Positions 100 through 60,466 are shown, counted from the first letter of the stretch. The stretch: 64,000 bases of DNA from Octopus bimaculoides (GCF_001194135.2 NC_068981.1:115839045-115903044); one strand, 5' to 3'. Numbers and translations are program-made. Notes: a model not told the origin generated them from the sequence alone.

Positions 100-790
100 G
101 ATATTAGCGTAGACACTTGAAAAAAATCTGCAACTTGGACACCAAGGCTAAGACGATACTGACACATCACCTATCATACTGACAAGATCTTTGTTAAACG
201 GAGGGATGGAACTAAAGGCATAAAATCAGTCCAAACGACTTTTCATTGCTTCATTGTGTCACTTAGGTAACACATATTGAACAGGAAGTGTTGACTAAAG
301 AAATAAGTACATCGCGTGTATAGTCATAGTGAATGTAACATCATCATTAAATTAAGCAAAGGACTCCGGGTTTACAGCTGCTCCATGTGAACCAAGGCTG
401 GTTGGACTGATTGATATATTTAGAGACTTGGAAGATAAATACTTATCATACCAGCAAAAAAGTACAAGAAAAAGAAAATTATACATGGGTATTATCGCGC
501 AAGCTAGCGAATGCCAACAACATTGACAGGAATAGCAGCTTCTCTTGGACTTGTGATAAGTACATTACATCTTATTAGAAGGTTGTGCCTTTACTGTCTA
601 AGAACAGAAAATAGACTTTAAATACCTACTTGATCAACATAAGAGATATGGATGCATCTAAACCTCCATGTTGTGACAGAAGGGTCGATTGTTCCAAAAT
701 TATGAGTAAGGCATCACTCACGGAACGTCTATTAGAGATTTTTTATACCTATATACCATATCCCACGACTGTGATGGCTATATCCTCGAT
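100..790 (+). mobile_element. Decayed R4-clade non-LTR retrotransposon fragment (post-RT region)
   Basis: Fragmentary translation gives DKIFVKRRDG (cf. DRLYLKSKQGGR at 40507-41256), NNIDRNSSFSWT (cf. SNIDHQSSVSWT) and a degenerate Cys-region. Many stops and frameshifts. Confidence 0.6.
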
Positions 791-1975
791 ACATTTAGGA
801 AAATTCTCATATTTATCTTTAGCAAGTTAGGTCTCAAAATCACAGTACACAAAATGATATTGTGATATTGTGAGATTGATTTTTCAAACACTTCCTTAGA
901 CGTAAACTTATACTCTTACAAGCTCTACTTATACTTAATGAAAAGCTTACGTATATACACAAACTTTTGCCAACCTCTGTCGTCTTTAAAAAATTCTCAG
1001 CCAATATTAATAAAAGGATATCTAAATCTCTTCTCATCTAAGAAAGTATTCGATAAGGCAGCCGCCCGCTGGCCAAAAGTGACTTCGAAAAGAAGATAGC
1101 TTTCACTTCGACCGTAACATGAATGAATCCTAAAAATAGACTTAGGAATATTATGTTTTGCCCCCCTTTTCCTTGAATGTTAAGAAAAAAAGAAAAGCAC
1201 TTCCCGGATAGCCAAAAGTATAAAAAAATCTTTAAAAAAGCCGTTCTCTGAAAGTTTCTCCTACTCGCTGTCTCAACATGAACAACATTATCACACGTAA
1301 ATTAGATCAGGCATCCACGCCAAAATGTACTCAACGTCATGCATAGTTAGTTCAGTTGTATACGAAGCTGAGGCGACCTTAGTTCTGCCGAACAACATAA
1401 CCAAAGAGAGAAAATATACTTGACTATAGGAAACTGACTAAAAAAATAAATATGCTGATCACTAGTCATATTTCTAGACCGTAGACAAGAAGAGAACCAC
1501 TTAGCTAGTTAGCCACATCTGGACCTGAAGGTCAGAAATACTCCACTCACCATCAAGTGGAGCATCATAGACCGATTTTCACCATACATTAAGTTCAACC
1601 AGACGCAGGCTTTCTCCATTTGCAAGATCTCAAACCGACCTATTGAACTCGAGATCGGAAAATTTGACAAGATACAAGCATCTCGACAACTTTCTGCTGT
1701 CGAAATGGAGAACACCACACTCTCTGTATTATGTATACATGCAAACTTCAACTCTTCTCCATCAGATCAACTCCATAGACCATTGTTAATTCATATATAA
1801 ATTTTACCATTATCTCCTTCTTACGGACCTAAGGGACATAACTCTTATCTTCCCCTTCTTCCAATTATTCCTTTTCTCGTATATTTAACTCTGTTGTTAT
1901 TTATTATTCTTTCTCGTTTTTTCTCAGCCTGATTGATTGGGATAAACTTAAAATTTATCTAAATGAAACTTAAAT
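790..1975 (+). mobile_element. Penelope-like element relic (RT C-terminus, linker, GIY-YIG endonuclease, 3' UTR)
   Basis: Broken reading gives LGLKITV..FLDVN, NINKRISK..KVFDKA, KHFPDSQKYKKIF, SVVYEAE, TIKWSIIDRFSPY and LNSRSENLTRYKHLDNFLL, the typical PLE RT/GIY-YIG motif order. A hammerhead-like word lies at 1928-1969. Confidence 0.75.
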
Positions 1976-2719
1976 TCAATTTCGTTAGATATGGACGTAA
2001 ACAACTATAACGATAAAATCAGCAAAAGGGAACTTAACAGAAAGGTCGATAAAAACTGTTTTATAAAATGTTTAGTACAATAACTATGCCACTCTTAATC
2101 AGTATACGTTTGTATAAATAATGTATATAGTTTTTCATTGAAAATACAAACCCCTAAACAAATATCATACTGAAATATTTTGACAATAACTGCTATATAT
2201 AGATTATTCATAAAGGAAAATACTATTTGAGATGCAGTCGATGTTGGAAACTAAACACCGGATGTCTCGGAATAGTGCCGGAAACGACCGAGCACAGTTG
2301 GTGACGACCGAGCACAGCCGGAGTCGATTGTAATAGCCAGAAGGTACTAAGCGCAAACGCAGGCGACCGAAAATAGCTGCAAGTGATGGAATGAAGTCGG
2401 AGTCGATAAACATAGCCCAAAGCGATCAAGTACAGCAGGAAAGACAACTTGCTGTAGCTGAAGGTGGGTGGCAGGAAACATATTTTCTTGTTAACTAACA
2501 TACACAGCTTTGAAAGAAAAATGAAGAAACAAAAATAAAAATGAAACGGTAGTTATACCATCAGACTTTTAATAAATTTAAGTCACTTTCTGAACGCACA
2601 TTACAAGTACTTAGTAGATTTGAGACGTTTGAACCCATATTTTGGAGGAATAAAAACGAGATCAATATTTATAAATTGATATCCCCACCACATGATCCTT
2701 CCCTTTATCCTTCTCGTCG

Positions 2720-2762
2720 CGTCGTCGTCGTCGTCATCATCATCATCATCGTCATCACCGTT

Positions 2763-2815
<53 letters not shown>
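2720..2815. repeat. (CGT)n/(CAT)n trinucleotide microsatellite
   Basis: Directly visible. Confidence 0.95.
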
Positions 2816-2829
2816 TACAGTTACAATAA

Positions 2830-3240
2830 TTATAAGTTTTGCTTAAAATTTATTATTATTGTTAACTGTTTACATAGACGTATTCGTACACGAAACGACG
2901 TAACTTGTAGTGCTGCTCTGAATTCTATAAGAAATCTATAGGGATAAACTTCAAAGTGAGAATATCGCTCTGCTAATACAATGTAAAGTACAATATTGAA
3001 TTGTAAACCTTTATTATATTTAGTCATATATTATGGCTATGAGACGAAATATTGTGTCTTTGCTAGCAATTAATACACACACACCCAGGTGAGCACATAA
3101 GTGCAAAAGAAGGTGGAAAAAATAGTACTCGAATACCAAAGGTAGATCAATATACTTTTTATTAAAGCTGCAAAATATCAGAAAGCTGTTACTCAGAGTT
3201 TCACATTTCCGATCGTCACACAGTTGCAATGAAAACTGTT
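2830..3240 (-). mobile_element. Possible highly decayed Penelope-like GIY-YIG relic
   Basis: Minus-strand LQFNIVLYIVLAERYS weakly resembles the PLE endonuclease C-half. GTGAAACTCTGAGTA hammerhead-like word at about 3190-3205. Confidence 0.3.
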
Positions 3241-3325
3241 ATGATGAATGTATATATATAGATACATATCGTCAGTAGATCATAGATTCGAAAGAGAAGA
3301 TGACTGTACCTTATAGAACAGTAGA

Positions 3326-3482
3326 GTAATTAGATAAAGATAGTTAATGGGATTACCAGGGTTTCACATGCAGAAAGCATTTATGGTCTCAGTCTGATGA
3401 GATGCAGTAACACTAAGCGCTTTATGGACGTGAAACCATGGGTAATCCCATACACTGGCCATAACTATCTTTATCTAATTAC
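3326..3482. repeat. Imperfect inverted repeat (fold-back) of about 157 bp
   Basis: GTAATTAGATAAAGATAGTTA (3326-3346) pairs with TAACTATCTTTATCTAATTAC (3462-3482). ATGGGATTACCAGGGTTTCAC pairs with GTGAAACCATGGGTAATCCCAT. Confidence 0.85.
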
Positions 3483-3483
3483 A

Positions 3484-3561
<78 letters not shown>

Positions 3562-3665
3562 TACAGGAAGTCACCAATGGTGCAAATAATATGAAATACG
3601 TAAACAAACGAGGGAAAACGAGTGAAATACATAAACAACGAGAAAAACTGGAAAAGATAGAAGGT

Positions 3666-3738
<73 letters not shown>
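3481..3738. repeat. (AC)n(AT)n and (AG)n microsatellites
   Basis: Directly visible at 3481-3559 and about 3667-3738. Confidence 0.95.
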
Positions 3739-3743
<5 letters not shown>

Positions 3744-3890
3744 CATCCGTTTATTTAAACGTCCGTGTAGGAAAAGAAAGATGGTCACGTGTAGAAAAGA
3801 AAGATGGACGATGGTCACGTCTGAACAACAAGATTCTTTAGCGAAAGGCGTCATAACTTGTCGGATCTTAATTTGATATAGACACTCTGA

Positions 3891-4114
3891 AGATGGCGAG
3901 CTAGCAGAATCATCAACACCCTTGGCAAAATGCATGGCATTTTGCATATCTTTACGTTCTGAGTTCAAATTCCGCCGAGACCAACTATGCAATTCATCCT
4001 TTCGGAGTAAAAAAAAATAAATAGAAGTTCTAGTTGAACGCTGGGGGTCGATGCAATCGACTCAAGCCCCAACTCTCAAATTACTGGCCTTGTACTTGAA
4101 TTTAAAACCAATTT
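3891..4114 (+). mobile_element. tRNA-derived SINE, family A
   Basis: Head GGCGAGCTAGCAGAATC (A-box-like), GTTCAAATTCC (B box) and shared body ...GGGGTCGAT...GGCCTTGT...; matches the other family-A copies in the window. Confidence 0.85.
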
Positions 4115-4457
4115 ACAGTCTAAATAATTCAAAGACATAGGGAAGTGTTGGCCTAACTTTCAGTCTTCAGGTTAAGGTTCGTGGCCTCCGTCTGAAGAAA
4201 AACATATCTCAACGTCCAACAAATCAATAAATAGAAAGAATAAAATAAGTAAGTTGTATAAGGAAAATGAGCAGAAAGAAAATTGAAAAACATGCGAATA
4301 ACCTTCAGTATTTCATTTGGGGAATTCCTGGGTCATGGTAGATTGACATTGCCACGGATATTTGTTGAGATTGGTAAGATAGAAAAGTGTTCACTGACAC
4401 CCCTAAACCAACACTAATACTTGTTTCATACACTAGAATGATGAGTTCAGAGTTTCG

Positions 4458-4777
4458 AAAGATACACACATATATATACATTATACATTCACGCAGAATC
4501 TCTGTGACATTGTGTGTAACAAGACTACCTTTTAATTACAAGTACAATCCATCCAAATGACTTCTATTTCCATCCACTCATAATAAAATGCACCGGAGTG
4601 GTTACCTATTGTACCTGAGACCTCGTGGTTGTGATGCGAACTATTCAACTATTTAACCATACTACCTCTATACAGAAACATACACACACGCCCGCGCATA
4701 TGATTATGTATATGCGTGTGTGTGTGGGTGCACCAGCATGACCGCAGCCACTTGGCTAAAACACATAAATAAATAAA

Positions 4778-4844
<67 letters not shown>

Positions 4845-4853
4845 ATGTGTGTA

Positions 4854-4885
<32 letters not shown>

Positions 4886-5194
4886 CTTATACACACATAC
4901 ACACACACTCAAACATACACGCACCCACACACACACGCATATACATAATCATATGCGCGGGCGTGTGTGTATGTTTCTGTATAGAGGTAGTATGGTTAAA
5001 TAGTTGAATAGTTCGCATCACAACCACGAGGTCTCAGGTACAATAGGTAACCACTCCGGTGCATTTTATTATGAGTGGATGGAAATAGAAGTCATTTGGA
5101 TGGATTGTACTTGTAATTAAAAGGTAGTCTTGTTACACACAATGTCACAGAGATTCTGCGTGAATGTATAATGTATATATATGTGTGTATCTTT
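4458..5194. repeat. Apparently perfect 274-bp inverted duplication around a (GT)n spacer
   Basis: 4458-4731 is the reverse complement of 4921-5194. ORFs 4649..4936(-) and 4785..5003(+) end in the identical peptide HIHNHMRGRVCMFLYRGSMVK. Confidence 0.9.
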
Positions 5195-5375
5195 TATCTT
5201 TTACTTGTTTTAGTCATTAGACAGCGGCCATACTGGTGCACCACTTTGACGAATTTTTTAGTCGAATGAACTTTTAGCCCTGATACGTATTCTATCGGTC
5301 TCTTTTGCTGAATAGCTAAGATACGTGGCCGTAAACACACCATCACCGGTTATCAAGTGGTAGTGGTGGTGGCAG
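5195..5375 (-). mobile_element. SINE family B, 3' half
   Basis: Reverse complement ...GGTGCACCAGTATGGCCGCTGTCTAATGACTAAAACAAGTAAAAGATAAAA matches the tails at 52550-52610 and 63200-63248. Confidence 0.8.
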
Positions 5376-5437
5376 GACAAATGCAGACACAATACACCAC
5401 ACACACACAAACACAAACACACACACTCACACACACG

Positions 5438-5469
<32 letters not shown>

Positions 5470-5475
5470 CATACA

Positions 5476-6010
5476 CAGTGTAACAGCAAAACTGTGATGC
5501 TCACAAATTCTTAAAACATTTTAAAACCAATGGACTTATCGATTTGCAATTTCACGTTTTTCAGTAAGACGTTCGACCATACTAACACCAGTTTTTGTAT
5601 GAATCAGGGAAATGCCCATTGAGAAATTTAGCTAGAAAGAGAACAGGCTGAAGTGTTTTGGGCCAGCCTTACCATGTCTTCCCAACTAACCAATGTTCAG
5701 AGTGTTAAGATCATCCAAGCCTTCAGTAATGGTACCAACATTCATTCTCTAGCTTCCATCTTCAAAGTCCATTCAAGAACCATCAAGATTATTGTGAATA
5801 AGTTTGAGAAAGAGGGAATAGTGTAAAGGAAAACAGGATCACGAGATCATCACCACAAGAAGGATCATCATTTCAGTCTGGAGCTGAAGAGAGCAATTAG
5901 AAGAGATCCAGCTCAATCCATAAGACGCTTGGCATGTGAGACTTTCAGGAGTTTCAGCCATGACACTTCAAAGATCGGTGACAGAAACTTGAAAATGAAA
6001 TCGTATTGAG
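5476..6010 (+). mobile_element. Tc1/mariner transposon 5' relic (terminus plus paired-HTH region of transposase)
   Basis: Starts CAGTG. ATG at about 5674 gives MSSQLTNVQSVKIIQAFSNGTNIHSLASIFKVHSRTIKIIVNKFEKEGIV*RKTGSR, then ELKRAIRRDPAQSIRRLA...MKSY, the bipartite HTH pattern. No DDE domain. Confidence 0.7.
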
Positions 6011-7398
6011 ATTTGTTATGTTCAGGTTTTGAATGATGCAAATACCTGGATTCTTTCTAAATATCCTGAAGCAAGAGATGAGAGAAAGGCCAAAAGATCG
6101 CTAAGGACTTACTTAAGAGGATTAGATTTAGGGCATAAGAGTAATAAGGTTACCATAAAGAAAAACATGTTCGGTTTCTGTTTTGAGATGTTATAAATAT
6201 CCCACCCCAACCAAGAAACAGCCTTCGTGCCCTTTGAGTGAATCGAATCTCGACACAAGAAAGCTGTCTTATAACAAATGTCACGGTGATTTAGTAAAAT
6301 TTTGTAACTCCAATTACATTCCGTTTATTCAGATAGAGCGAAAATATGTGCGAGACCCATAGCCTACTATAGACACCTTGCCACGAATATAGCAACAATC
6401 TATTAAAAATACTGTGCTCTTAATTTAGGAACTAAGGAAATAATTATCATTCTAAATATATCTGGTAGAGTAGAATATTTGCATTGCGTAACCATGGATT
6501 ACTTAAAAACATATTGAAGATAATTTCTTTCTCCTGCTTCAAATGCAGATGAATAAAGCGTGAATGTGTAATTTTTCTCAACATATACGAATATACGAAT
6601 TTTGAAAGTGTTTAGTTACAAAAAATTATTGTTTAAATGTGCCGTCGAAAGGGAAAAGATCCGAATTTTGTTTCACTATAATTATATTTCAATAAGTGAT
6701 TTAGTTTTACTATTAATCTGCACTATAGAAACTGTTTGAAATTTTCAATAATTCATTTTAGGTCAAACATTGTGAAATAAGAGATTGCTCGTTACTTGAT
6801 ACATTGTAGACTTACTTTGGAAAAAGATTCCACTCCCTCAGATTCGGTCGTTACCATCATGAGAGACGACTCGTTTACGAATGGATGCATATAGGAAGGT
6901 GTCCATCAGCATATTCAAAGATAGATTTATATATCTTAATGTAGACGAAACTAAATTCTTATATCTATTAGACTGAGAAACGGTAACGAAACTCCGTTGG
7001 TTTCTGAAGAGTAGTTGATCCGTGTAGTATTTGGGTTCAGAGTCGTGGACGAAATTCATTTTATCATTTCTGTCCTCAATCTTTCGTAAGGAAAAACAGT
7101 ATAAAGTCCTATACAATTAATAAATATTTAAGCTGTCAACACATATGACTATTTGCCTCCCAAGCACCAAATGGAATCTGATATACCATGCATTGAGGTT
7201 TAAAGAGAAAGAGAAAAAGATAGGGAGAAAGCGAAATGTAAAGGTGTCCCTCAAAAGAATGAATTATGGCTTGCATGTTACAATACACTGCAATACTTCA
7301 AAATCATCCGACCGTTTTCTTTACTGATAACGATCAGATATACGATACGGACGAGATACTCTGCTACGTTTTTGTACGAATGTAGACACGCGCACTCG

Positions 7399-7448
<50 letters not shown>

Positions 7449-7488
7449 TATGTGTGTATGCATATATAGACACATTCATGCTTGTATG

Positions 7489-7520
<32 letters not shown>

Positions 7521-7728
7521 TAAACATATACACATATATACATATTTGTACACACAGAGATATATATGTATATGTGTATACTTTAATATATATATGTTTG
7601 TATGTGTATATATACGAATTTGAATAGAAAATTTCCTTTTCTTTGAAGCATTATTTTGAAGACGTGATTTTCATGATACATGAAACATCTTTGAGTTTAA
7701 AAACTTTTCATAAATTTCTTTGTAATAA

Positions 7729-7787
7729 GGCGGTGAGCTGCCAGAAACGTTAGAACGACGGGCGAAATGCTTAGCAGTATTTCGTCT
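7729..7787 (+). mobile_element. SINE family A, 5' part (split by the Tx1 LINE)
   Basis: GGCGGTGAGCTGCCAGAAACGTTAG...GCTTAGCAGTATTTCGTCT stops abruptly; the remainder resumes at 12255. Confidence 0.9.
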
Positions 7788-7966
7788 CTGTGAGTTGGGA
7801 GTGTTGGTATTGTTACCGAAGTACGTTGATATAGTAAGTGTAGTTTCTGTTGACTGTTCCCGTGTTGTTGCCTGTTGTATTTGCTGTACCTGTTTATATT
7901 TGTATAATAATTCGAAAACTATTGTGTGTTTTCCCATGTGTGGGGGAAACATTAATTGCTGGCAAG

Positions 7967-8960
7967 ATGCCAAAATGCTTGTCTTCGTCTAACGAGGATT
8001 CGACAGATTTAGAGGCCAAAAAAGCGGAAAAAATATAATTGAAAGCTGTTTCAGATTCGTCTGAAAATGAATTCCCAATTTTTCCGAGGACTCCCGTTGC
8101 AAGGAGGAACATCGAGGTGAAAAGCCTTCAAACGGAGGAAGGCAAACAGAAAAGAAGTTTTGCGTCTGCAGTTGGAGATAGAACTCGCCAACTGTCGACG
8201 AATAAAAGTGATTTGTTGATGTACAAGGACATGATTATAATTCAAGATGGCGTTGTCAAGGTTCAACCACCAGAAGGGTTTTAACTGACAGAAAGGAAAA
8301 AAAAACTATCATATTCAAGACGTACTGCGAAAAAGAAAGAAAAATCGAGCGAGCAAGCGAGGAGAAGGTAGAAAAATGTTTAAAGCCCATCTGGCCAGAG
8401 GGAAAAAATTCTGTACCATCAAGGTACACCTAAAGAATATTGAAACGGCACAATTGCACTCGGTGAAATCATTGGAAACAGAAGACGTAATTTTAATACC
8501 AATATACATGGGTATGAGGATAACCAAAATACGAATACTAAAGGTCTCACCTCAATTCGACCCTATGTGGTTGATGGCGGAAGTCTTGTCAGAAAGAATA
8601 CATGAGATAAACTTACTTCAGGCTACCTTCTCTGAAAAAGCAAATTGGACCGGCCACACGGTCCACCTGATTAATCAAACAGAACAAGCTGTATTGGAAC
8701 AGCTTCCAGAAAAAATAGAAGTTGTGGAGGAGTTCTTCAACGTTTTTGTCGAGGGGCGTAAATCCTGATGTTTTCAGTGTGGCCAGCTAGGCCATATAAA
8801 AAAAAATACTGTAAGGAAGGCGAGGAGGAATCTGAAGATGAGGAGGGAGAGAAAGAAAAAGAAACAGAAAAGAAAGTCACTAGCAAAAGAAAAATAGAAA
8901 ATGTAAACTAACCAAAACAAATAGAACCACGACCAAAGAAGACAGCAAAAAGAGTCCAAT
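7967..8960 (+). pseudogene. Tx1 ORF1 (gag-like, CCHC zinc knuckle), disrupted
   Basis: ATG 7967 MPKCLSSS... is in frame with 8039..8284. After a frameshift it continues in 8376..8768 ...VFVEGRKS*CFQCGQLGHIKK..C (Cx2Cx4Hx4C, with an A-run slip). K/E-rich tail. Confidence 0.75.
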
Positions 8961-11362
8961 CAGGCTAGTCGCTATTTATGTACCCAACATTATGGGCCCG
9001 CAAAGTGAATATTTTCGTGACCTTGGCAAGTTCCTGGCCACGTCGCATTCACTAGTATTGTTAGGAGACTTTAACAGAATATATGACGCACACACAGATT
9101 GTGTTGGCTCAAACATGAACAGAAAATGTAACCCAGGCTTACGGGATCTGCTAAGTCACTTTCAGCTAGCAGATCCATATAGCTTGGAACACCCGAACAC
9201 TCCACAGTGTACGTGGTCAAATAGTGACGGGTCTTCCAGAACATATCTATATAAGATTTTAATTAGAGAAACAGATAAGTCCATAGCTAAGTGTCCACAA
9301 TTTTTTCTAGTCAGCTACAGTGACCACAAGATGGTTACCTGTAAACTAACGGTAGATAAGTGGCATAGTCAGGGATCTGGCTACTGGAAACTCAATATGT
9401 TCCTTTTGGCGATTGGGAAGTACAGAACGCGGATCGAGATGTTTGTACAGAGGGCATTAACAGGTACCATCATTAGTGGTACGCCCTAAAAAGAGCCATC
9501 AAATATGAGACTATTAAGTTTAGCATAAGTTTAGCTAAGAAGGGACGTAGAATAGGAAATTGTCTAGTTAAGGAACTAGAAGAAACTTGGAGGACTGGTA
9601 ATGCGGACCAAGCGAGGTTGAAAAGACTGGAGTTAAACCAGCATCTTGACGCCCAACACATGGGAAGTATTGCCAGAGCTAAGTTACGTGCGATGAGAAG
9701 TGAAGGAATCAATGCCGTTGGAAGGGCCCGAGTGGTGGAAGCTCGACAAGGAAATAGTTCCACTATTCGGTCTTTGACGAATCAAAATGGTGTCTTGGCA
9801 AGCGAACCCACCCGAGAAAATGTGTGAGGCCTTTTGGGAGTACTTCGCCCAGCTGTTCGGAGGTGACGGCGGTCCTGGTGATGGGAGAGCTCTCGAGGAC
9901 TTTCTTGCCGGGCTGTCGTGTCTCTCGGGGTCGGATGCGGAGTCTTGCGAAGAGTCAATTACGCTAGTGGAGGTGATGGAGGCTTTGGCCGACTGTAAAG
10001 CGAGTAAGTCGCTGGGACTTGATGATCTTCCGTACGAGCTGTATAAATGTATGCCAGACTTGTTCGGGAATCTACTGGCTGACGTTTACGCGAACTGGCA
10101 ACAGAATGGGTTTATCCCCATATCTGTGCGCCGGGAAGTAGTGATGTTGGTCAGAAAGGACCCGGACAAGGGTGACGTTATAGAGAATTTCAGGCCCATC
10201 ACTCTGTTAAACGCAGAAGTGAAGATTTTGGCCAAGGTCTTAGCGAAAAGGTTGGCGCGTGTCGCGAATGGTATAGTCGGGGAGGCACAGACATGTGCCA
10301 TCGCAAGCAGAACCATTCAGGATACCCTCCATCTTATTCGCTATACCATAGAGAGAGTTGATAATAAATCTGCTAAAGGTGGGGCATTGGTACATTTGGA
10401 CCAGTCTAAAGCTTTTGATAGGGTTGACCATCGATACCGGGCGGCTGTGCTTGCGCGGTTCGGCCTGGACCTTGGCTTCCTCAGGTGGTTTATCGCTTTG
10501 TACCACAACATTGACTCGATAGTTNNNNNNNNNNNNNNNNNNNNNNNNNNNNNNNNNNNNNNNNNNNNNNNNNNNNNNNNNNNNNNNNNNNNNNNNNNNN
10601 NNNNNNNNNNNNNNNNNNNNNNNNNNNNNNNNNNNNNNNNNCACTTTTGTATGTAGTGGCTCTCGAGCCCCTACTGCGAAGGCTGAGTGGCATCCCGAGA
10701 GAACCACGTCTGGAGGAGTTTGTTTGGGCTGACGCGGATGATATCACTATCAGCGTAACCTCAGTAGCACGACTACGTGAAGTGGGAAAGACTATTGAGG
10801 CTTACGAGGAGGTGGCAGGAGCAAAGATTAGCCGGGAAAAGTCGGTCGGCTTGCAGCTCGGCACCTGGGTTGGCAAGTCGATGCCTTCAGACAGCGTTGT
10901 TGGGCGCTAGACGGAGAGACCGGTTAAGTTGCTGGGACTTGGTTTTGGACCAGGCCTCCAGGTAGAGAACTGGACAGAGGTATTGAGCAGAGTGGCTGCA
11001 GTAGTCAAGACAAAGTCTTGGCGGTGGCTATCCCTGAAAGGGAGGGCGGAGGTGGCCAATGTGTTTATTGCATCGGTCATTACCTACCGCCTGACCGTCG
11101 TGCCCTGTCCGGATTCATGGTTGATCAGGTTGGAGAGACAGCTCTTTCACTTTTTGTGGAAGTGCAGGTCGCCACTTGTTATACGCTCTGTCTGCTGTCA
11201 AAAGCCTTTAGAGGGAGGTTTAGGGATGCCTTGGTTAATGATGCGCAGGCATGCGTTGAGATTGAGGTACCTCTGGATTCTCCTGGATAGTGAACGGGTG
11301 TGGTCTCCGCTGGCCAGACAAATGTTCCCCGAGTTCAAAAGTTTTTGCAAACAGGAAGCCTG
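8961..11362 (+). pseudogene. Tx1 ORF2 (AP endonuclease plus reverse transcriptase), frameshifted
   Basis: APE motifs AIYVPN, LLGDFN, SDHKMV, GSGYWKLN. RT motifs NFRPITLLNAEVKILAKVLAKRL, LDQSKAFDRVDH, DADD (mutated YADD), GAKISREKS, SLKGRAEVANVFIAS. The APE N-terminus is deleted at about 8960. Confidence 0.92.
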
Positions 11363-12254
11363 NNNNNNNNNNNNNNNNNNNNNNNNNNNNNNNNNNNNNN
11401 NNNNNNNNNNNNNNNNNNNNNNNNNNNNNNNNNNNNNNNNNNNNNNNNNNNNNNNNNNNNNNNNNNNNNNNNNNNNNNNNNNNNNNNNNNNNNNNNNNNN
11501 NNNNNNNNNNNNNNNNNNNNNNNNNNNNNNNNNNNNNNNNNNNNNNNNNNNNNNNNNNNNNNNNNNNNNNNNNNNNNNNNNNNNNNNNNNNNNNNNNNNN
11601 NNNNNNNNNNNNNNNNNNNNNNNNNNNNNNNNNNNNNNNNNNNNNNNNNNNNNNNNNNNNNNNNNNNNNNNNNNNNNNNNNNNNNNNNNNNNNNNNNNNN
11701 NNNNNNNNNNNNNNNNNNNNNNNNNNNNNNNNNNNNNNNNNNNNNNNNNNNNNNNNNNNNNNNNNNNNNNNNNNNNNNNNNNNNNNNNNNNNNNNNNNNN
11801 NNNNNNNNNNNNNNNNNNNNNNNNNNNNNNNNNNNNNNNNNNNNNNNNNNNNNNNNNNNNNNNNNNNNNNNNNNNNNNNNNNNNNNNNNNNNNNNNNNNN
11901 NNNNNNNNNNNNNNNNNNNNNNNNNNNNNNNNNNNNNNNNNNNNNNNNNNNNNNNNNNNNNNNNNNNNNNNNNNNNNNNNNNNNNNNNNNNNNNNNNNNN
12001 NNNNNNNNNNNNNNNNNNNNNNNNNAAAAAAGAAAAGAAAAATGTGCCAGCGATAGATCGGGGCTTGTGGGGTCGGAGCGTGGCCTGATCATCGCTTCAT
12101 TTGTGTTGTCTAACGTACTGTTAATATCATTCGATTTTTTATATTTTATATAATTTTTAAAGTCATATTTTATGTAAACCATTCGCATTACTGATCCCAA
12201 TCAGTTGTTTTGTACCATTCTATTTTTAGCCCCCCGTGGGCAATAAAGAAATTG

Positions 12255-12418
12255 GTATTTTGTCTGTCTTTACATTCTGAGTTCAAATTCCGCCGAGGTC
12301 GACTTTGCCTTTGATTCTTTCGAGGTCGATAAATTAAGCACCAGTTACGTACTGGGGTCGATCTAATCGACTGGTCCCCTCCAAAATTTCGGGCCTTGCG
12401 TCTAGAGTAGAATAGATT
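12255..12418 (+). mobile_element. SINE family A, 3' part of the split copy
   Basis: Resumes GTATTTTGTCTGTCTTTACATTCTGAGTTCAAATTCCGCCGAGG... It is followed by ATAAATTTCCTTGTAAT (12419-12435), matching ATAAATTTCTTTGTAAT (7710-7726) before the 5' part. Confidence 0.92.
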
Positions 12419-12514
12419 ATAAATTTCCTTGTAATGTTTAGCTTAGAATTATAACATTGTTTAGTCCATTAAAGTTTCAATACCTACTCAGCCTCATTAG
12501 CTGAACGAAATTAT

Positions 12515-12718
12515 AATAAATCTTTCTATTAAGGGTACAAGGTTTGAAATTTTCGCAAGAGGGAATAGTTAATTACATCGACCCCAGTAGCTGACAGGTA
12601 ATTATTTTATTGACCGTGAAAGGATGAAAGGCACGTCTGACCTCGGCGGAATTTGACCTCAGAACGGTCGCTAAGTATTGTGCTAGACGTGCTAACGATT
12701 CTGCTAGCTTGCTGTCTT
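12515..12718 (-). mobile_element. SINE family A
   Basis: Reverse-complement copy (GACCTCGGCGGAATTTGACCTCAGAAC...CTAACGATTCTGCTAGCT). Confidence 0.85.
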
Positions 12719-50432: not shown

Positions 50433-51169
50433 TTTCCAAGTCATAACATTACATCAGAATAAATACAACTTACAAACACGGCCAAAAAATAGACAATGGC
50501 TTCAACCTGCACATAAGCACACACATGCATCAACTTATCTCTTCTCGAATTCAGCAAAATCCTTTAATTTCGCATTCCTCGGTACCTGCTCATACGTTAA
50601 ATATTAAATTCTGTTTCAAACGACTATTACAAAAATGTGTTTTGGTTCATTATACTTAAATGTCAATTGTAGACGCTTCACATTTACCTTGAGGTACAAA
50701 AACAGCATCACTTTTAGATTATTTATACATTATATTTGATAAACTTTCGCTTATTTGTATAATGCTATAGCTATATCGGTAAGGGGTACATTACCCTTCA
50801 TTTTAGACATGAATGACTTATTTGTCAACATATCCAGTAGCAGTTAATCTCAAGCGTATAACATTACCAGACATTCCTAGACAATTGTTTCTGACAAAAG
50901 AACCCAGATTTCTATAAAGAGAACATCATAAAGGTCGAATTTATACTCTTCAGTAGGTGAGATTTAAAAGAAAATAAAAAGATGTCTAAAATATACATAG
51001 AATTTTTTCTTCGTTTTCATTATTATCTAGGTATTTGTATATTCATTCTTCCACTCATGATTTATTGAAGCAAGACTAAAAACTAAAGGACTTGGCTGCT
51101 TAAATATCTAATATTTAATTAATTAAATACCAGTCACACAATATGATCGATGGAAGCTTTACTTTAGCA

Positions 51170-51790
51170 TTCTTTAGGGTTAATAGCTGGCACGAACGAT
51201 GTTGCTTTCAAGGAGACACTGGGCGTCGATGAGAATCAACTGGCTAGTCTGATCCAGAGAACTTTCAGGCTGGGGCTTGTGGATAATTTCCAGAAATCTC
51301 TAACTTGACATTGCTACCGAGAGGTGGGATGAGACATTACCAGGTCATAATAAACTCTCCACATATGGATGTGCCGTCAGCCGAACATCCTTATGTGCGC
51401 AAAACGATGAAGCTGTTTTACACTCATTCATACAGTACCCGACTTATTGAGCTTTGTTGAATACCTGCAGCTGTGTGTGGGACAGATCCGTCGATCAGAT
51501 GAGTTCATCGTGAAAATCCTCCCATCACCTTCCTTTAGCTAGGAAGAGAGATAGTTTTTATCTGTCTGGTGGCATTAATGATTAAAGTTGTGTGGTGGAC
51601 CAGCTTGAAAGGGCTGAGGACAGACATCATTACTTGGTAAGCTCTCATCAACGTTTTGAAGTTACCTTCAAAAGGAAAATGAGGGTGGAGAGGGGAGCTG
51701 CCTTCCAGTAAATTCATTGAAAGGTGGATGAAGTAGTACTAATGGCCCGAGTGAACAGGCCTGTTCTAAGCATGCGCCTGTAGATAAAGA
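51170..51790 (+). mobile_element. Old Tx1-family ORF2 C-terminal fragment
   Basis: LGVDENQLASL..DNFQKSL..CYR, a degenerate C-x2-C..ETVLH..C finger, VVWWTSLKGL and KFIERWM..MARVNRPVLSMRL*. Confidence 0.65.
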
Positions 51791-51904
51791 GGGAAATTCT
51801 TCTATGGTCTAGTTAGCCGTGTATATATATGTTTGATGGCCTTTCTCATTGATGAGATTTGTTCATATTTTTATCTCAATATTTTAGCTGATATATATAT
51901 ATAT

Positions 51905-52040
51905 AAATAAAGATTTACTTTTCCTAATGGGATAAAAAACCAAGGCTGTGTATAATATAGAACTATTTATAAATGTTCTATATTATACACAGCCTTGTTT
52001 TTTTTTTATTATCTTATTACGAAAAGTAAATCCTTATATT
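51905..52040. repeat. Near-perfect palindrome (collapsed MITE-like fold-back)
   Basis: CAAGGCTGTGTATAATATAGAAC (51941-51963) / GTTCTATATTATACACAGCCTTG (51975-51997), with a self-complementary centre and imperfect outer arms. Confidence 0.85.
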
Positions 52041-52180
52041 CACACGCTGATATATAACCTACGTTGGACCCCTTATTTCATAACCACCGAACCTGGAGCT
52101 TAACTGTGATCTATCTATAGCACTTACTCAGCATTATCTGAAACCCCTGGGTCTAATTGACACCACTATCCCTCATAAGC

Positions 52181-52232
<52 letters not shown>

Positions 52233-52280
52233 TATAGGGTGCATCAGCATGCCCGCCTCTCTAAGATGAAACTATAAACA

Positions 52281-52323
<43 letters not shown>

Positions 52324-52327
<4 letters not shown>

Positions 52328-52361
52328 GGAAACTGAAGGAAGTCCGTCGTATATATGTATT

Positions 52362-52396
<35 letters not shown>

Positions 52397-52612
52397 TTGT
52401 GTGTCTGTGTTTGTCCACTCCACCATCACTTGACAACCGATGGTGGTATGTTTACGTCCCCGTAACTTAGCAGTTCAGCAAAAGCGACCGATGGAATAAG
52501 TACTAGACTTACAAAGAATAAATCCTGGGGTCGATTTGCTCAACTAAAGGTGGTGCTCCAGCATGGCCGCAGTCAAATGACTGAAAAAAGTAGAAGAGTA
52601 AAAGAGAGAGTA
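52324..52612 (+). mobile_element. SINE family B, 5'-truncated, with internal (AT)/(GT) microsatellite
   Basis: GACGGAAACTGAAGGAAGTCCGTC-microsatellite-CTTGACAACCGA...CCAGCATGGCCGCAGTCAAATGACTGAAA. Confidence 0.85.
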
Positions 52613-53691
52613 TATCAGCTAAATGATTGATATAAAAAACATGAACAAAAGTTCAATTTTCATCAATGATAATCAAATCATCTATGATCTATGACTCTTT
52701 CAAATGCTTCGTTTTAGTTTATTTTTGCTTATGTACTAAACTGAGTTCTACCCTTGATAAATTAAATAAAGGCAAATTATGCCAACATATTAGAGTCTCA
52801 ACTCCTCAGTTATAGAGTTCAAACTATTTTCACTTACAGACAGAGACAGAAATTTTCTGCCGGTGGCTACTGATTAAATTGTAGGAAAAAAAGGTTGAAA
52901 GAAAAGTAAAATTTGTCCAAAAATCGAACTTACCGCGGCACGTGTATAAATAATCATACATGTTATTACCACTTTTGATTAAAACAACTGAGTCCCTATA
53001 TTTTTTTAATTTAAAGTCCAGCACTATTTTGGTGTAAATCAATCATTTTCTTATTTTATAGCATTTTGTCACTTTCTATTTATTTCTCTTCCTCTCTCTG
53101 TTCCTACCCTTCTTTCTCTCTTTCTCTCTGTCTCTTCCTCTGTATCTCTCCTTCTCAATCATTGCATGGAAGTTGGGAATGATGCAAAGAAATATGTATA
53201 CAGGAATAACATAATAATTGTAATAAATAAAATAACTAAATAATATTCATTCAAAGATCTAAGAGATTTCAACATTTCAATCTCAACGTAGCACTTAGTG
53301 ATCCGGGAGTGGTAGTATAACCCCTCCCAGAAGTCAACGCATAAAAGGGAGCCATTTGAGAGGAATCTCATAAAACGTGAAAGCCATAACTTTTTCACTG
53401 AATGTCTCAGAGTAAATTTTGGTAGAAAGAAATGGCTATATACTCTCTTGTTATTCTTTTTATTGATGCTGTGACAGAAGAGAGCATCGTACAAACTACA
53501 TTGTGATACTTAGTTACGGCTCTTTTCAATCTAAGTACAGATACCACTATTTTCACCTTTGCCTTTCATTCTTCTGCGGTCAATAAAATAAAGTACTAGT
53601 CAAGTACTGGGATTGATTTCATCAGCCAGGCGCACGCACACCCATTAAATCTTTGGCTTTGTGCTGATGTTAGAAATTGTTAATATTATTA

Positions 53692-60299: not shown

Positions 60300-60466
60300 T
60301 TAATACTGGTTTCAAATTTTGGCAGAAGGCCAGTAATTTCGGTGTGGGTTAAGTCGATTACATCAACTCCCGTGCTTAACTGGTACTTGTTTCATCGAAC
60401 CCGAAAAAATAAAAGTCAAAGTCAACCTCGGTGGAATTTGAACTCAGAACGTAAAGACGAACGCCG
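60300..60466 (-). mobile_element. SINE family A, 5'-truncated
   Basis: Reverse-complement B box and tail. Confidence 0.8.

What the first reader, a model, noticed from the sequence alone, without database searches (positions are those of the whole stretch)
7710..12435. Tx1-clade LINE inserted inside the tRNA-derived head of a SINE: candidate SINE-targeting retrotransposon
Seen: one family-A SINE is split into 7729-7787 and 12255-12418 by a ~4.5-kb L1/Tx1 element (zinc-knuckle ORF1, APE-RT ORF2, AATAAA end). Two nested TSDs are readable. The LINE TSD is GTATTT(C/T)GTCT (7777-7787 / 12255-12265) and the SINE's own TSD is ATAAATTTC(T/C)TTGTAAT (7710-7726 / 12419-12435), which also shows the scaffold is joined correctly across the internal gaps. 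The site lies between the SINE A and B boxes, so it breaks the Pol III promoter. Established: Tx1-clade APE elements are repeatedly sequence-specific (Tx1 into Tx DNA transposons; Keno into U2 snRNA genes; Dewa into tRNA tandem arrays; Mutsu into 5S rDNA; Koshi/Kibi into microsatellites). Inference: this family may use the very abundant SINE (6 other copies in 64 kb) as a renewable safe-harbour target, a hyperparasite relationship I do not recall being described for cephalopods. One insertion cannot prove specificity.
Basis: partly seen in the sequence, partly recalled or inferred. Interest (0 to 1): 0.9.

Follow-up and report, generated by a model that had tools for sequence, protein, structure and literature searches.

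The report
Dead LINE nested in a SINE
A broken L1-type jumping gene really does sit inside a short SINE repeat in this octopus-like genome, but this looks like an ordinary chance nested insertion, and related LINEs appear to be what copies such SINEs around rather than elements that hunt them.

Summary
**Observation: confirmed.** One SINE copy is split into 7727-7787 and 12254/5-12418 by a ~4.5 kb L1-superfamily LINE (7788-12253). Both duplications are present:
- Inner target-site duplication (TSD): 11-12 bp.
- Outer TSD: 17 bp with 1 mismatch.

Both assembly gaps are bridged collinearly when compared with an Argonauta hians relative.

**Interpretation (SINE-targeting LINE): not supported.**
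- It rests on one insertion. This SINE family alone covers 2.8% of the window.
- Six other copies that span the site are unoccupied.
- A second fragment of the same LINE clade in the window is not in a SINE.
- Thirteen tails of this clade in 22 kb of Argonauta, and one metagenome copy, lie in varied contexts. Those flanks share only a TAT(T) start, and none is inside a SINE head.
- The T that makes TATTTC at the hit site is private to this SINE copy. Four other copies read CATTTC.
- The LINE copy is dead. It lacks ~100 N-terminal endonuclease residues, has frameshifts and stops, and its RT box reads ADADD.

**What I found instead.**
- The clade's 3' tail (hairpin + AATAAAGAAATC) is shared with Argonauta CORE-type SINEs.
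- That tail is significantly similar to the tail of the window SINE family.
- So the LINE clade is probably the SINE's mobiliser.

**Not resolved.**
- No other copy of this LINE family could be reached with these tools, so the decisive flank census was not run.
- Tx1 versus L1 assignment is unresolved.

The parts
7710..7726 (+). Left copy of the SINE's own target-site duplication, ATAAATTTCTTTGTAAT.
   Evidence: Read directly. Matches 12419-12435 at 16 of 17 positions.
7727..7787 (+). 5' piece of the split SINE (consensus positions 1-61, with the A-box-like motif). Its last 11 bases, 7777-7787, are the left copy of the LINE's TSD.
   Evidence: Alignment to the other copies. A-box-like motif found.
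7788..8387 (+). LINE 5' end: 5' UTR and decayed start of ORF1. No ORF in this frame runs on into the ORF1 remnant.
   Evidence: Three-frame translation. No match to the first 101 residues of the Argonauta ORF1.
8388..8828 (+). ORF1 remnant. It is 29% identical to residues 102-247 of the Argonauta ORF1. There is an in-frame TGA at 8766-8768. A degenerate CCHC knuckle starts at 8769, and its last Cys is lost to a frameshift in an A-run.
   Evidence: tblastn E=1e-15. Pfam zf-CCHC at 18.4 bits, below the curated cut-off. Translation.
8941..9477 (+). C-terminal two thirds of the AP-endonuclease domain (residues 100-275 of the relative's ORF2). The first ~99 residues and the C-terminal half of ORF1 (~1 kb in the relative) are absent. 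The reading frame closes with TAA at 9487-9489.
   Evidence: tblastn at 43% identity. Weak Pfam Exo_endo_phos_2 hit. The relative has a full APE domain.
9477..9791 (+). Linker between endonuclease and RT, in a different frame from the APE part (frameshift).
   Evidence: tblastn at 37% identity with a frame change. Translation.
9814..10524 (+). N-terminal half of the reverse transcriptase, in a different frame from the preceding segment. It runs into gap 1.
   Evidence: Pfam RVT_1 E=2.7e-10. tblastn at 57% identity to residues 390-626.
10525..10641 (.). Assembly gap 1. It hides about 24 residues of the RT (the ...NG..S..F...RG.RQGCPLSP segment in relatives).
   Evidence: The flanks are collinear on the relative's ORF2.
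10644..11360 (+). C-terminal half of the RT and the following region. The catalytic box reads ADADD (10728-10742) where relatives have AYADD. There is an in-frame TAG at 10908-10910 where relatives have W.
   Evidence: tblastn at 55% identity to residues 651-893. Translation. Relatives' sequences.
11363..12025 (.). Assembly gap 2. It hides the last ~245 residues of ORF2 (including the zf-RVT zinc finger seen in relatives) and the start of the 3' UTR.
   Evidence: Mapping. zf-RVT is present in relatives.
12026..12253 (+). LINE 3' UTR. It ends in the clade's tail: hairpin GCCC-CCCGT-GGGC, then AATAAAGAAATT (tail 12229-12252/3). There is no poly(A).
   Evidence: A tail profile built from relatives only gives its best window hit here, E=0.013. 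Tails compared.
12254..12418 (+). 3' piece of the split SINE (consensus ~50-214). It holds the B-box-like motif, the CORE-like middle and the LINE-like tail. Bases 12255-12265 are the right copy of the LINE's TSD.
12419..12435 (+). Right copy of the SINE's own TSD, ATAAATTTCCTTGTAAT.
   Evidence: Read directly.

Best explanation
**Claim.** This is an ordinary nested retrotransposon insertion.

**Sequence of events.**
1. A CORE-type, A/B-box-bearing SINE inserted first, giving the 17-bp TSD.
2. An L1-superfamily LINE (ORF1 with a CCHC knuckle; ORF2 with AP-endonuclease, RT and a C-terminal zinc finger) then integrated by target-primed reverse transcription at a staggered break 11-12 bp wide inside that copy.

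**Why this site.**
- In an Argonauta relative, the clade's machinery shows only a short, degenerate preference for sites beginning TAT(T).
- The hit site, (G)GTATTTCGTCT, carries TATTTC only because this SINE copy had a private C-to-T change.
- The site was therefore available by chance in a very abundant repeat.

**State of the copy.** It is dead, through an internal ~1 kb deletion, frameshifts, stops and a mutated RT box.

**Real link between LINE and SINE.** It is the usual one. The clade's conserved 3' hairpin-plus-AATAAAGAAATC tail is also the tail of octopod CORE-type SINEs, so LINEs of this clade most likely mobilise those SINEs in trans.

**Shown versus inferred.**
- Shown: the anatomy, the TSDs, homology to the relatives, tail sharing, and the flanks of the relatives.
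- Inferred: the TPRT mechanism, the TATT preference applying to this particular family, and trans-mobilisation.
For: - TSDs and exact SINE reconstitution.
- Domains and collinearity with a near-intact Argonauta element. The closest solved structure is human L1 ORF2p, E=2e-63, against 1e-26 for R2.
- SINE family coverage of 2.8% and six unoccupied copies spanning the site.
- No second LINE copy or tail in a SINE in the window. The second clade fragment at 51128-51920 lies outside the SINE.
- Argonauta L004 has 13 tails. Nine are followed directly by TAT, and four TSDs begin TATT(T/A): TATTTATTTTCATTAC, TATTATCTTTGTGCC, (C/T)ATTTGTCAAAC and TATTTCAAGGAA.
- The L002 tail is followed by (ATT)n.
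- The T is private to this copy: four other copies have C there.
- Tail homology: SINE-A tail against the clade tail gives 0 of 5000 shuffles, and against the Argonauta LINE tail 2 of 5000. Alignment A3 shows shared B-box, core and tail between the window SINE and the Argonauta SINEs.
Against: - No other copy of this exact LINE family could be retrieved. The best relative is only ~56% identical in protein and ~71% in DNA. Family-level specificity is therefore untested, and target specificity can change between related Tx1 families (Kojima 2015, PMC4494074).
- In the window, the TSD starts 1-2 nt before TATTT rather than exactly at it.
- This copy's own tail is not significantly similar to the SINE-A tail, so this family may not be that SINE's direct partner.
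- The TATT preference rests on about 13 junctions in one 22-kb stretch of another genus. Two of those junctions (15060, 15310) may be one tandem duplication.
Confidence: 0.85

Rival explanations
1. One reading: this LINE family's endonuclease recognises the SINE head sequence around GCGG(C/T)ATTTCGTC|GTCTTTACG and uses the abundant SINE as a dedicated safe-harbour target.
For: - One clean insertion at a defined position in the SINE head, with a TSD.
- L1/Tx1-type elements include many target-specific families, some of which target other transposons: Tx1 into Tx1D, and Tx1-Mar into Mariner-N4_AMi, LTR elements and Harbinger (PMC4494074).
- A distant relative (L006) occurs as a head-to-tail tandem, an arrangement sometimes seen in site-specific LINEs.
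Against: - It rests on a single insertion, and the SINE base rate is ~3% for this family alone.
- Six other copies spanning the site are empty.
- The second clade fragment in the window, 13 Argonauta tails and one metagenome copy are not in SINE heads.
- The hit sequence differs from the SINE consensus at the base that creates TATTT.
- The LINE 5' region contains T-runs that would stop Pol III read-through from the SINE promoter, so the site offers no obvious transcriptional benefit.
Confidence: 0.05
2. Weak bias rather than specificity. SINE copies are mildly over-hit because they often carry, or mutate to, TATT-like sites. Alternatively, because they share the LINE's tail and chromatin or Pol III context, LINE ribonucleoprotein complexes (RNPs) are brought near them.
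For: - A TATT-type preference is seen in relatives.
- The hit site contains TATTTC.
- Argonauta SINEs of this tail type cluster tightly, several within tens of bp of each other.
Against: - Clustering is also expected from simple AT-rich site preference and very high SINE density.
- No within-head insertion is seen among ~11 Argonauta SINEs or the six other window copies spanning the site.
Confidence: 0.08
3. Assembly artefact: the two SINE halves and the LINE pieces were joined wrongly across the gaps.
For: There are two gaps of estimated length inside the element. The reading frame changes across gap 1.
Against: - The halves of one SINE carry the same private variants.
- An 11-bp inner and a 17-bp outer duplication sit exactly at the junctions.
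- LINE pieces are collinear with a relative across both gaps, with missing lengths close to the estimates.
- The post-gap piece ends in the clade's tail.
Confidence: 0.02

Closest known systems
Target-specific Tx1-clade LINEs: Tx1L into Tx1D, Tx1-Mar into Mariner-N4_AMi, Keno into U2, Dewa, Mutsu, Kibi/Koshi (Kojima & Fujiwara 2004; Kojima 2015, PMC4494074).
   Same: - Two-ORF APE/RT element of the L1 superfamily.
- No poly(A), and a defined 3' end.
- Found inside another repeat, with a TSD.
- Some Tx1 families also mobilise SINEs (SINEU).
   Different: - Those families are called specific because a large share of copies (more than 20%) have the same flank. Here there is one copy, and relatives' flanks share only TAT(T).
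- Membership of the Tx1 clade was not tested by phylogeny.
Ordinary nested LINE-in-SINE insertions, such as L1 within Alu/MIR in mammals.
   Same: - A LINE interrupts an older, very abundant SINE.
- The TSDs are nested.
- The site is chosen by a short, degenerate endonuclease preference.
   Different: The element here has a stringent-type structured 3' tail rather than poly(A). The preferred motif looks like TATT rather than TT/AAAA.
Stringent LINE-SINE partnerships with a shared 3' tail, such as UnaL2/UnaSINE1 (Kajikawa & Okada 2002; Ohshima & Okada 2005) and bivalve HCD SINEs with several LINE partners (PMC11481361).
   Same: - The last ~25-45 nt of the LINE 3' UTR (hairpin + AATAAAGAAATC) recur at the 3' end of tRNA-like, CORE-type SINEs in Argonauta.
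- In diverged form they also recur in the window's SINE family.
- TSD starts are similar.
   Different: - The partner here is an L1-superfamily element, whereas the bivalve study reports other clades (for example CR1-Zenon and Nimb/I).
- This particular LINE copy's tail has diverged (GCCCCCCGTGGGC) from the SINE's tail.
Octopus tRNA-derived SINEs OK, OR1 and OR2 (Ohshima & Okada 1994). OR1/OR2 is counted among the CORE-SINEs (PMC4824008, PMC4758252). RepeatMasker reports 'tRNA-Core' SINEs in octopus (PMC8967140).
   Same: - A/B-box-like head.
- A middle segment resembling the CORE domain.
- Very high copy number in an octopod-like genome.
   Different: I had no reference sequences of OR1, OR2 or OK, so identity with any of them was not tested.

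Membership tests
L1 superfamily of non-LTR retrotransposons (L1/Tx1 group) | ORF2 with an N-terminal AP-type endonuclease | tested here: met
   Window 8941-9477 aligns to residues 100-275 of the relative's APE domain at 43% identity. The window's Pfam hit is weak. The relative has full Exo_endo_phos, E=1.6e-11. The window copy lacks the first ~99 residues.
L1 superfamily of non-LTR retrotransposons (L1/Tx1 group) | Reverse transcriptase closest to L1-type RTs | tested here: met
   RVT_1 E=2.7e-10 in the window. The relative's ORF2 against PDB gives human L1 ORF2p at 2e-63 over residues 8-853, against 1e-26 for R2.
L1 superfamily of non-LTR retrotransposons (L1/Tx1 group) | C-terminal zinc-binding domain (zf-RVT / CCHC) in ORF2 | tested here: inconclusive
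   In the window this region falls in gap 2. It is present in relatives (PF13966; CPRC...H....C motif).
L1 superfamily of non-LTR retrotransposons (L1/Tx1 group) | Target-site duplication from TPRT | tested here: met
   An 11-12 bp duplication of SINE positions ~50-61 at both junctions.
Tx1 clade (as distinct from L1 proper) | RT-domain phylogeny placing the element with Repbase Tx1 references (RTclass1) | not testable with these tools
   No Tx1 reference sequences were available, and database hits carry no clade names. Two things are consistent with Tx1 but do not show it. ORF1 has a CCHC knuckle and no Transposase_22 hit. 'L1-Tx1' is reported by RepeatMasker in coleoids (PMC8967140).
Target-specific LINE (SINE-targeting) | A large share of independent copies (more than 20%, Kojima 2015) flanked by the same target sequence at the same position | not testable with these tools
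   No other copy of this family was found in the window or in any reachable collection.
Target-specific LINE (SINE-targeting) | Close relatives, or elements they mobilise, show the same target | tested here: not met
   None of these lies inside a SINE head: 13 tails in Argonauta L004, L002, and the second fragment in the window. The only shared feature is TAT(T) at the TSD start.
Target-specific LINE (SINE-targeting) | The recognised sequence is the consensus of the target repeat | tested here: not met
   The hit copy reads GGTATTTCG. The four other copies aligned at this position read GGCATTTCG (three copies) or G-CATATCA (one copy).
Stringent LINE-SINE partnership (shared 3' tail) | SINE 3' end homologous to the LINE 3' UTR end | tested here: met
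   In Argonauta, SINE and LINE tails are near-identical over ~30-45 nt. The window SINE tail against the clade consensus gives 0 of 5000 shuffles, and against the Argonauta LINE 2 of 5000. Against this LINE copy's own tail it is not significant.
tRNA-derived CORE-type SINE | [quoted passage not shown] | tested here: met
   TGGCAGAATCG at consensus positions 13-23 and GAGTTCAAATTCC at 75-87.
tRNA-derived CORE-type SINE | Head recognisable as a tRNA | tested here: inconclusive
   ARAGORN finds no tRNA in the window. On the consensus it finds one only at an 80% threshold, with an odd anticodon. Rfam gives no tRNA hit.
tRNA-derived CORE-type SINE | Central CORE domain | not tested
   The resemblance of ...GCCTTTCATCCTTTCGGGGTCGATAAAATAAGTACCAG... 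to the MIR/CORE segment is from memory only. No reference sequence was compared.

The most novel reading that the evidence does not exclude
This LINE family may, despite the evidence from its relatives, insert preferentially at position ~61/62 of the SINE head. Because its clade also supplies the tail that mobilises such SINEs, that would make a reciprocal relationship: the SINE borrows the LINE's machinery, and the LINE uses the SINE as its landing pad.
Probability: 0.04. Interest if true: 0.65.

Novelty: new member of a known kind. Interest (0 to 1): 0.15.

Why it matters
As it stands this is routine repeat anatomy. It is useful mainly for masking and annotation, and as a check that the scaffold is joined correctly.

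The side result has modest value for transposon specialists. An L1-superfamily LINE clade in octopods carries a conserved hairpin-plus-AATAAAGAAATC tail. That tail is also borne by the CORE-type SINEs that dominate octopus genomes. This nominates a mobiliser for the octopus SINE expansion, and it can be tested genome-wide.

If the SINE-targeting idea were true, it would add SINEs to the list of repeats used as targets by L1/Tx1-type elements. That would be a new target for a known strategy, not a new strategy.

Tried and rejected
- **Other copies in the window.** I looked for another copy of the LINE, or of its tail, by blastn, a 15-mer with up to 3 mismatches, and a tail profile. Only the element itself turned up.
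- **Protein search for same-family copies.**
  - The RT query gave a best hit of only 56% identity, in Argonauta hians.
  - The APE query gave only 2 hits, both unnamed.
- **Public DNA collections.** Every scan came back empty:
  - metagenome contigs by protein alignment;
  - metagenome contigs by an exact 21-mer of the tail;
  - viral contigs by protein alignment;
  - prokaryote genome contigs with the tail-plus-SINE junction pattern.

  The family-level flank census therefore could not be run.
- **Insertions at the same site in other SINE copies.** The copy at ~60310-60463 and the one at 53557-53623 start near the site. Both are just 5'-truncated or diverged copies with unrelated upstream sequence.
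- **SINE-A tails against the tail profile.** nhmmer did not pick them up. Their similarity shows only in gapped pairwise alignment against shuffles.
- **tRNA detection in SINE heads.** It failed or was marginal.
- **Tx1 versus L1.** Database names, PDB and papers did not resolve it.
- **Assembly artefact.** Considered and rejected (see rival explanations).
- **Pol III co-transcription from the SINE.** Considered and rejected, because there are T-runs early in the LINE.

Full report

Yes.
- The window (64 kb, 36% G+C, 12 assembly gaps) holds a SINE family. It has 11 recognisable copies or fragments at 71-90% identity to their consensus, covering 1,608 bp or 2.8% of non-N sequence.
- In the multiple alignment one copy is split.
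  - Its 5' part ends ...GCTTAGCAGTATTTCGTCT at 7787.
  - Its 3' part resumes GGTATTTTGTCTGTCTTTACA... at 12254/12255.
- Eleven bases of the SINE are present on both sides. They are GTATTTCGTCT at 7777-7787 and GTATTTTGTCT at 12255-12265, with one C/T difference in a CpG. Counting 7776/12254 makes it 12 bases.
- The whole SINE is bracketed by ATAAATTTC(T/C)TTGTAAT at 7710-7726 and 12419-12435, matching at 16 of 17 positions.
- The break is at consensus position 61/62. This lies between an A-box-like motif (13-23) and a B-box-like motif (75-87).
- ARAGORN and Rfam do not recognise a tRNA in these decayed heads. 'tRNA-derived' therefore rests on the box motifs alone.

**2. The gaps**

I used a nearly intact relative from Argonauta hians as a ruler. 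It is locus L001/L004, with an ORF1 of 476 aa and an ORF2 of 1138 aa containing one stop.

| Window coordinates | Maps to |
|---|---|
| 8388-8828 | ORF1 residues 102-247 |
| 8941-9477 | ORF2 residues 100-275 |
| 9477-9791 | ORF2 residues 278-383 |
| 9814-10524 | ORF2 residues 390-626 |
| gap 1 | unread |
| 10644-11360 | ORF2 residues 651-893 |
| gap 2 | unread |

All segments are on one strand and in order.
- Gap 1 hides about 24 residues, against 117 N. The frame differs on its two sides, which an estimated gap length allows.
- Gap 2 must hide about 245 residues (~735 nt) plus the start of the 3' UTR, against 663 N.
- The 228 bases after gap 2 are non-coding.
- A profile of the 3' tail, built only from relatives, has its best hit in the whole window at 12229-12252, E=0.013.
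- Together with the nested duplications, this shows the scaffold is joined correctly.

**3. What the insert is**

- Pfam finds RVT_1 (E=2.7e-10), a weak endonuclease match and a sub-threshold zinc knuckle in the window copy.
- The Argonauta relative has Exo_endo_phos, RVT_1 and zf-RVT in ORF2, and a CCHC knuckle in ORF1.
- The closest solved structure is human LINE-1 ORF2p, at 2e-63 over residues 8-853. R2 proteins score 1e-26.
- So it is an L1-superfamily LINE.
- Whether it belongs to the Tx1 clade could not be tested. No Tx1 references were available, and database names were uninformative. RepeatMasker-based work does report 'L1-Tx1' in coleoids (PMC8967140).

The copy is dead:
- About 1 kb is missing, covering the C-terminal half of ORF1 and the first ~99 residues of the endonuclease.
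- There are at least two frameshifts, at ~9477 and ~9791-9814.
- In-frame stops lie at 8766-8768, 9487-9489 and 10908-10910.
- The RT catalytic box reads ADADD (10728-10742) where relatives have AYADD.
- There is no poly(A). The element ends ...TTTTAGCCCCCCGTGGGCAATAAAGAAATT.

**4. Is the SINE a dedicated target?**

I could not obtain a second copy of this exact family.
- There is none in the window.
- The nearest proteins in the large database are only ~56% identical: Argonauta hians, plus a few short metagenome contigs. DNA identity is ~71%.
- Scans of metagenome, viral and prokaryote collections found nothing.

The decisive census therefore remains to be done. What can be tested argues against targeting.

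(a) Base rate.
- This SINE family alone is 2.8% of the window.
- SINEs are reported as the largest repeat class in Octopus bimaculoides and O. vulgaris (PMC8967140).
- Any LINE family with some tens of copies is therefore expected to have members inside SINEs.

(b) Six other SINE copies in the window that span the site are unoccupied.

(c) A second, 5'-truncated fragment of the same clade is not in this SINE.
- It lies at 51128-51783, with 3' UTR running to about 51920.
- It is 33-45% identical to the relatives' ORF2 C-terminus and ends ...NRPVLSMRL*.

(d) In 22 kb around the Argonauta element there are 13 elements (2 LINE 3' ends and ~11 SINEs of two types).
- All end in the same tail, ...GGCCCTTGTGGCTAATAGAGAAATC.
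- Their 3' flanks are varied. Nine of the 13 start directly with TAT, and two more are near-misses.
- Four copies have verifiable TSDs that begin TATT: TATTTATTT(T/C)CATTAC, TATTATCTTT(G/C)TGCC, (C/T)ATTTGTCAAAC and TATTTCAAGGAA.
- None is inside a SINE head.
- A metagenome relative (L002) is followed by (ATT)n.

(e) The window TSD, (G)GTATTTCGTCT, contains TATTTC.
- The T is private to this copy and is present in both TSD copies, so it predates the insertion.
- Three other copies read GGCATTTCG and one reads G-CATATCA.
- The consensus SINE therefore lacks the motif that best matches the clade's apparent preference.

(f) Co-transcription from the SINE's Pol III promoter would give no benefit. 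T-runs occur early in the LINE (for example GTTTTCCC near 7925).

**5. The relationship that the data do show**

- The clade's 3' tail is conserved from the window copy to Argonauta and the metagenome copies. It is a 4-bp hairpin with a 5-nt loop, followed by AATAAAGAAAT(C/T).
- One stem pair changes on both sides, G-C to C-G. This is an inference from few sequences.
- In Argonauta the same tail ends two SINE types.
- One type shares its B-box region, its ...TCGATAAAA(C/T)AAGTACCAG...GGGGTCGATG(G/T)(T/A)ATCGAC... middle and its tail with the window's SINE family (alignment A3).
- The window SINE tail (TTCGGGCCTTGTGTCTAGAGTAGAAA) compares with other tails as follows:

| Compared with | Shuffles reaching the score |
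|---|---|
| Clade tail consensus | 0 of 5000 |
| Argonauta LINE tail | 2 of 5000 |
| L002 tail | 21 of 5000 |
| This LINE copy's own diverged tail | not significant |

- Three of six window SINE copies also have flanks starting TAT.
- The most economical reading is the standard one. LINEs of this clade mobilise these SINEs through a shared, structured 3' end. In other words the SINE depends on the LINE, not the reverse.

**6. Comparison with known systems**

- Target-specific Tx1 families, including ones that target other transposons, are well documented: Tx1 into Tx1D, and Tx1-Mar into Mariner-N4_AMi and other elements (PMC4494074).
- They are defined by a large share of copies having the same flank. 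Kojima uses more than 20%.
- That criterion could not be applied to this family here. It is not met by its relatives.
- What is present matches ordinary nested insertion plus a stringent LINE-SINE partnership (Ohshima & Okada 2005; in molluscs, PMC11481361).
- I found no paper describing a LINE partner for octopus SINEs, or a SINE-targeting LINE in cephalopods. These searches cover only open-access full text.

**7. Verdict**

- The SINE-targeting inference is unsupported and indirectly disfavoured.
- Novelty: a new member of a known kind.
- Interest is low (0.15).
- I give about 4% to the reading that the family really prefers the SINE head. That would merit about 0.65.

Noticed in passing
window 51128-51920 (+): A second, 5'-truncated fragment of the same LINE clade. 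It covers the ORF2 C-terminus (33-45% identical to relatives, ending ...NRPVLSMRL*) and a 3' UTR ending ...TTTTAGCTGATATATATATATAAATAAAGATTT. A (TA)n run may have replaced the tail hairpin. It is not inside the SINE family.
   Followed up: partly
L004 (Argonauta hians BAAFZT010000001.1, 9777835-9799847), whole locus: About 11 SINEs of two types plus two LINE 3' ends in 22 kb all carry the tail GGCCCTTGTGGCTAATAGAGAAATC. Nine of 13 flanks start TAT. This is a clear LINE-SINE partnership for an L1-superfamily element in an octopod.
   Followed up: partly
L004 12285-12650: Directly after the full-length Argonauta LINE comes a piece resembling a type-2 SINE head (...GGTTCAATCTGAATCTCAG...). It is fused to a ~240-nt copy of the LINE 3' UTR. 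This is either a 5'-truncated LINE inserted in a SINE or a long SINE variant built on the whole 3' UTR.
   Followed up: no
window 12229-12241; L004 tails; L002 ~1994-2006: The tail hairpin shows one pair changed on both sides. It reads GGCC-CTTGT-GGC(C/T) in the Argonauta and metagenome copies and GCCC-CCCGT-GGGC in the window LINE. This suggests a conserved stem-loop recognised by the RT. Too few sequences were available for a formal covariation test.
   Followed up: partly
L002 2018-2105: The metagenome relative's tail is followed by an (ATT)n run of at least 29 units to the contig end. It could be a microsatellite target or a tail-derived repeat.
   Followed up: no
L006 (ENA ERZ26052130 ctg11195c) 337-10169: A more distant relative (45% identity) occurs as at least two head-to-tail LINE copies. 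The same 401-aa and 395-aa ORFs recur at 337/1490 and 7884/9037. Its tail reads ...TTCGGCCTTGTGCC...AATAAATAATATC. The source organism is unknown.
   Followed up: no
window 12572-12718 (-): The neighbouring inverted SINE copy has a ~16-bp deletion (ATTTCGTCCGTCTTTA of the consensus) that spans the very site hit by the LINE in the split copy. It is probably a coincidence.
   Followed up: no
window 7788-9791 versus 9814-11360: G+C differs within the LINE. It is 0.39-0.43 in the 5' UTR, ORF1 and endonuclease part and 0.51-0.53 in the RT. The Argonauta relative is 0.50-0.53 throughout its coding sequence. Uneven decay or a recombinant origin was not examined.
   Followed up: no
window 52400-52500 (+) and 52180-52380: There appears to be a different SINE-like repeat (...CGTAACTTAGCAGTTCAGCAAAAGCGACCGATGGAATAAG...). 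It sits next to long (TA)n and (TG)n runs. It was not characterised.
   Followed up: no
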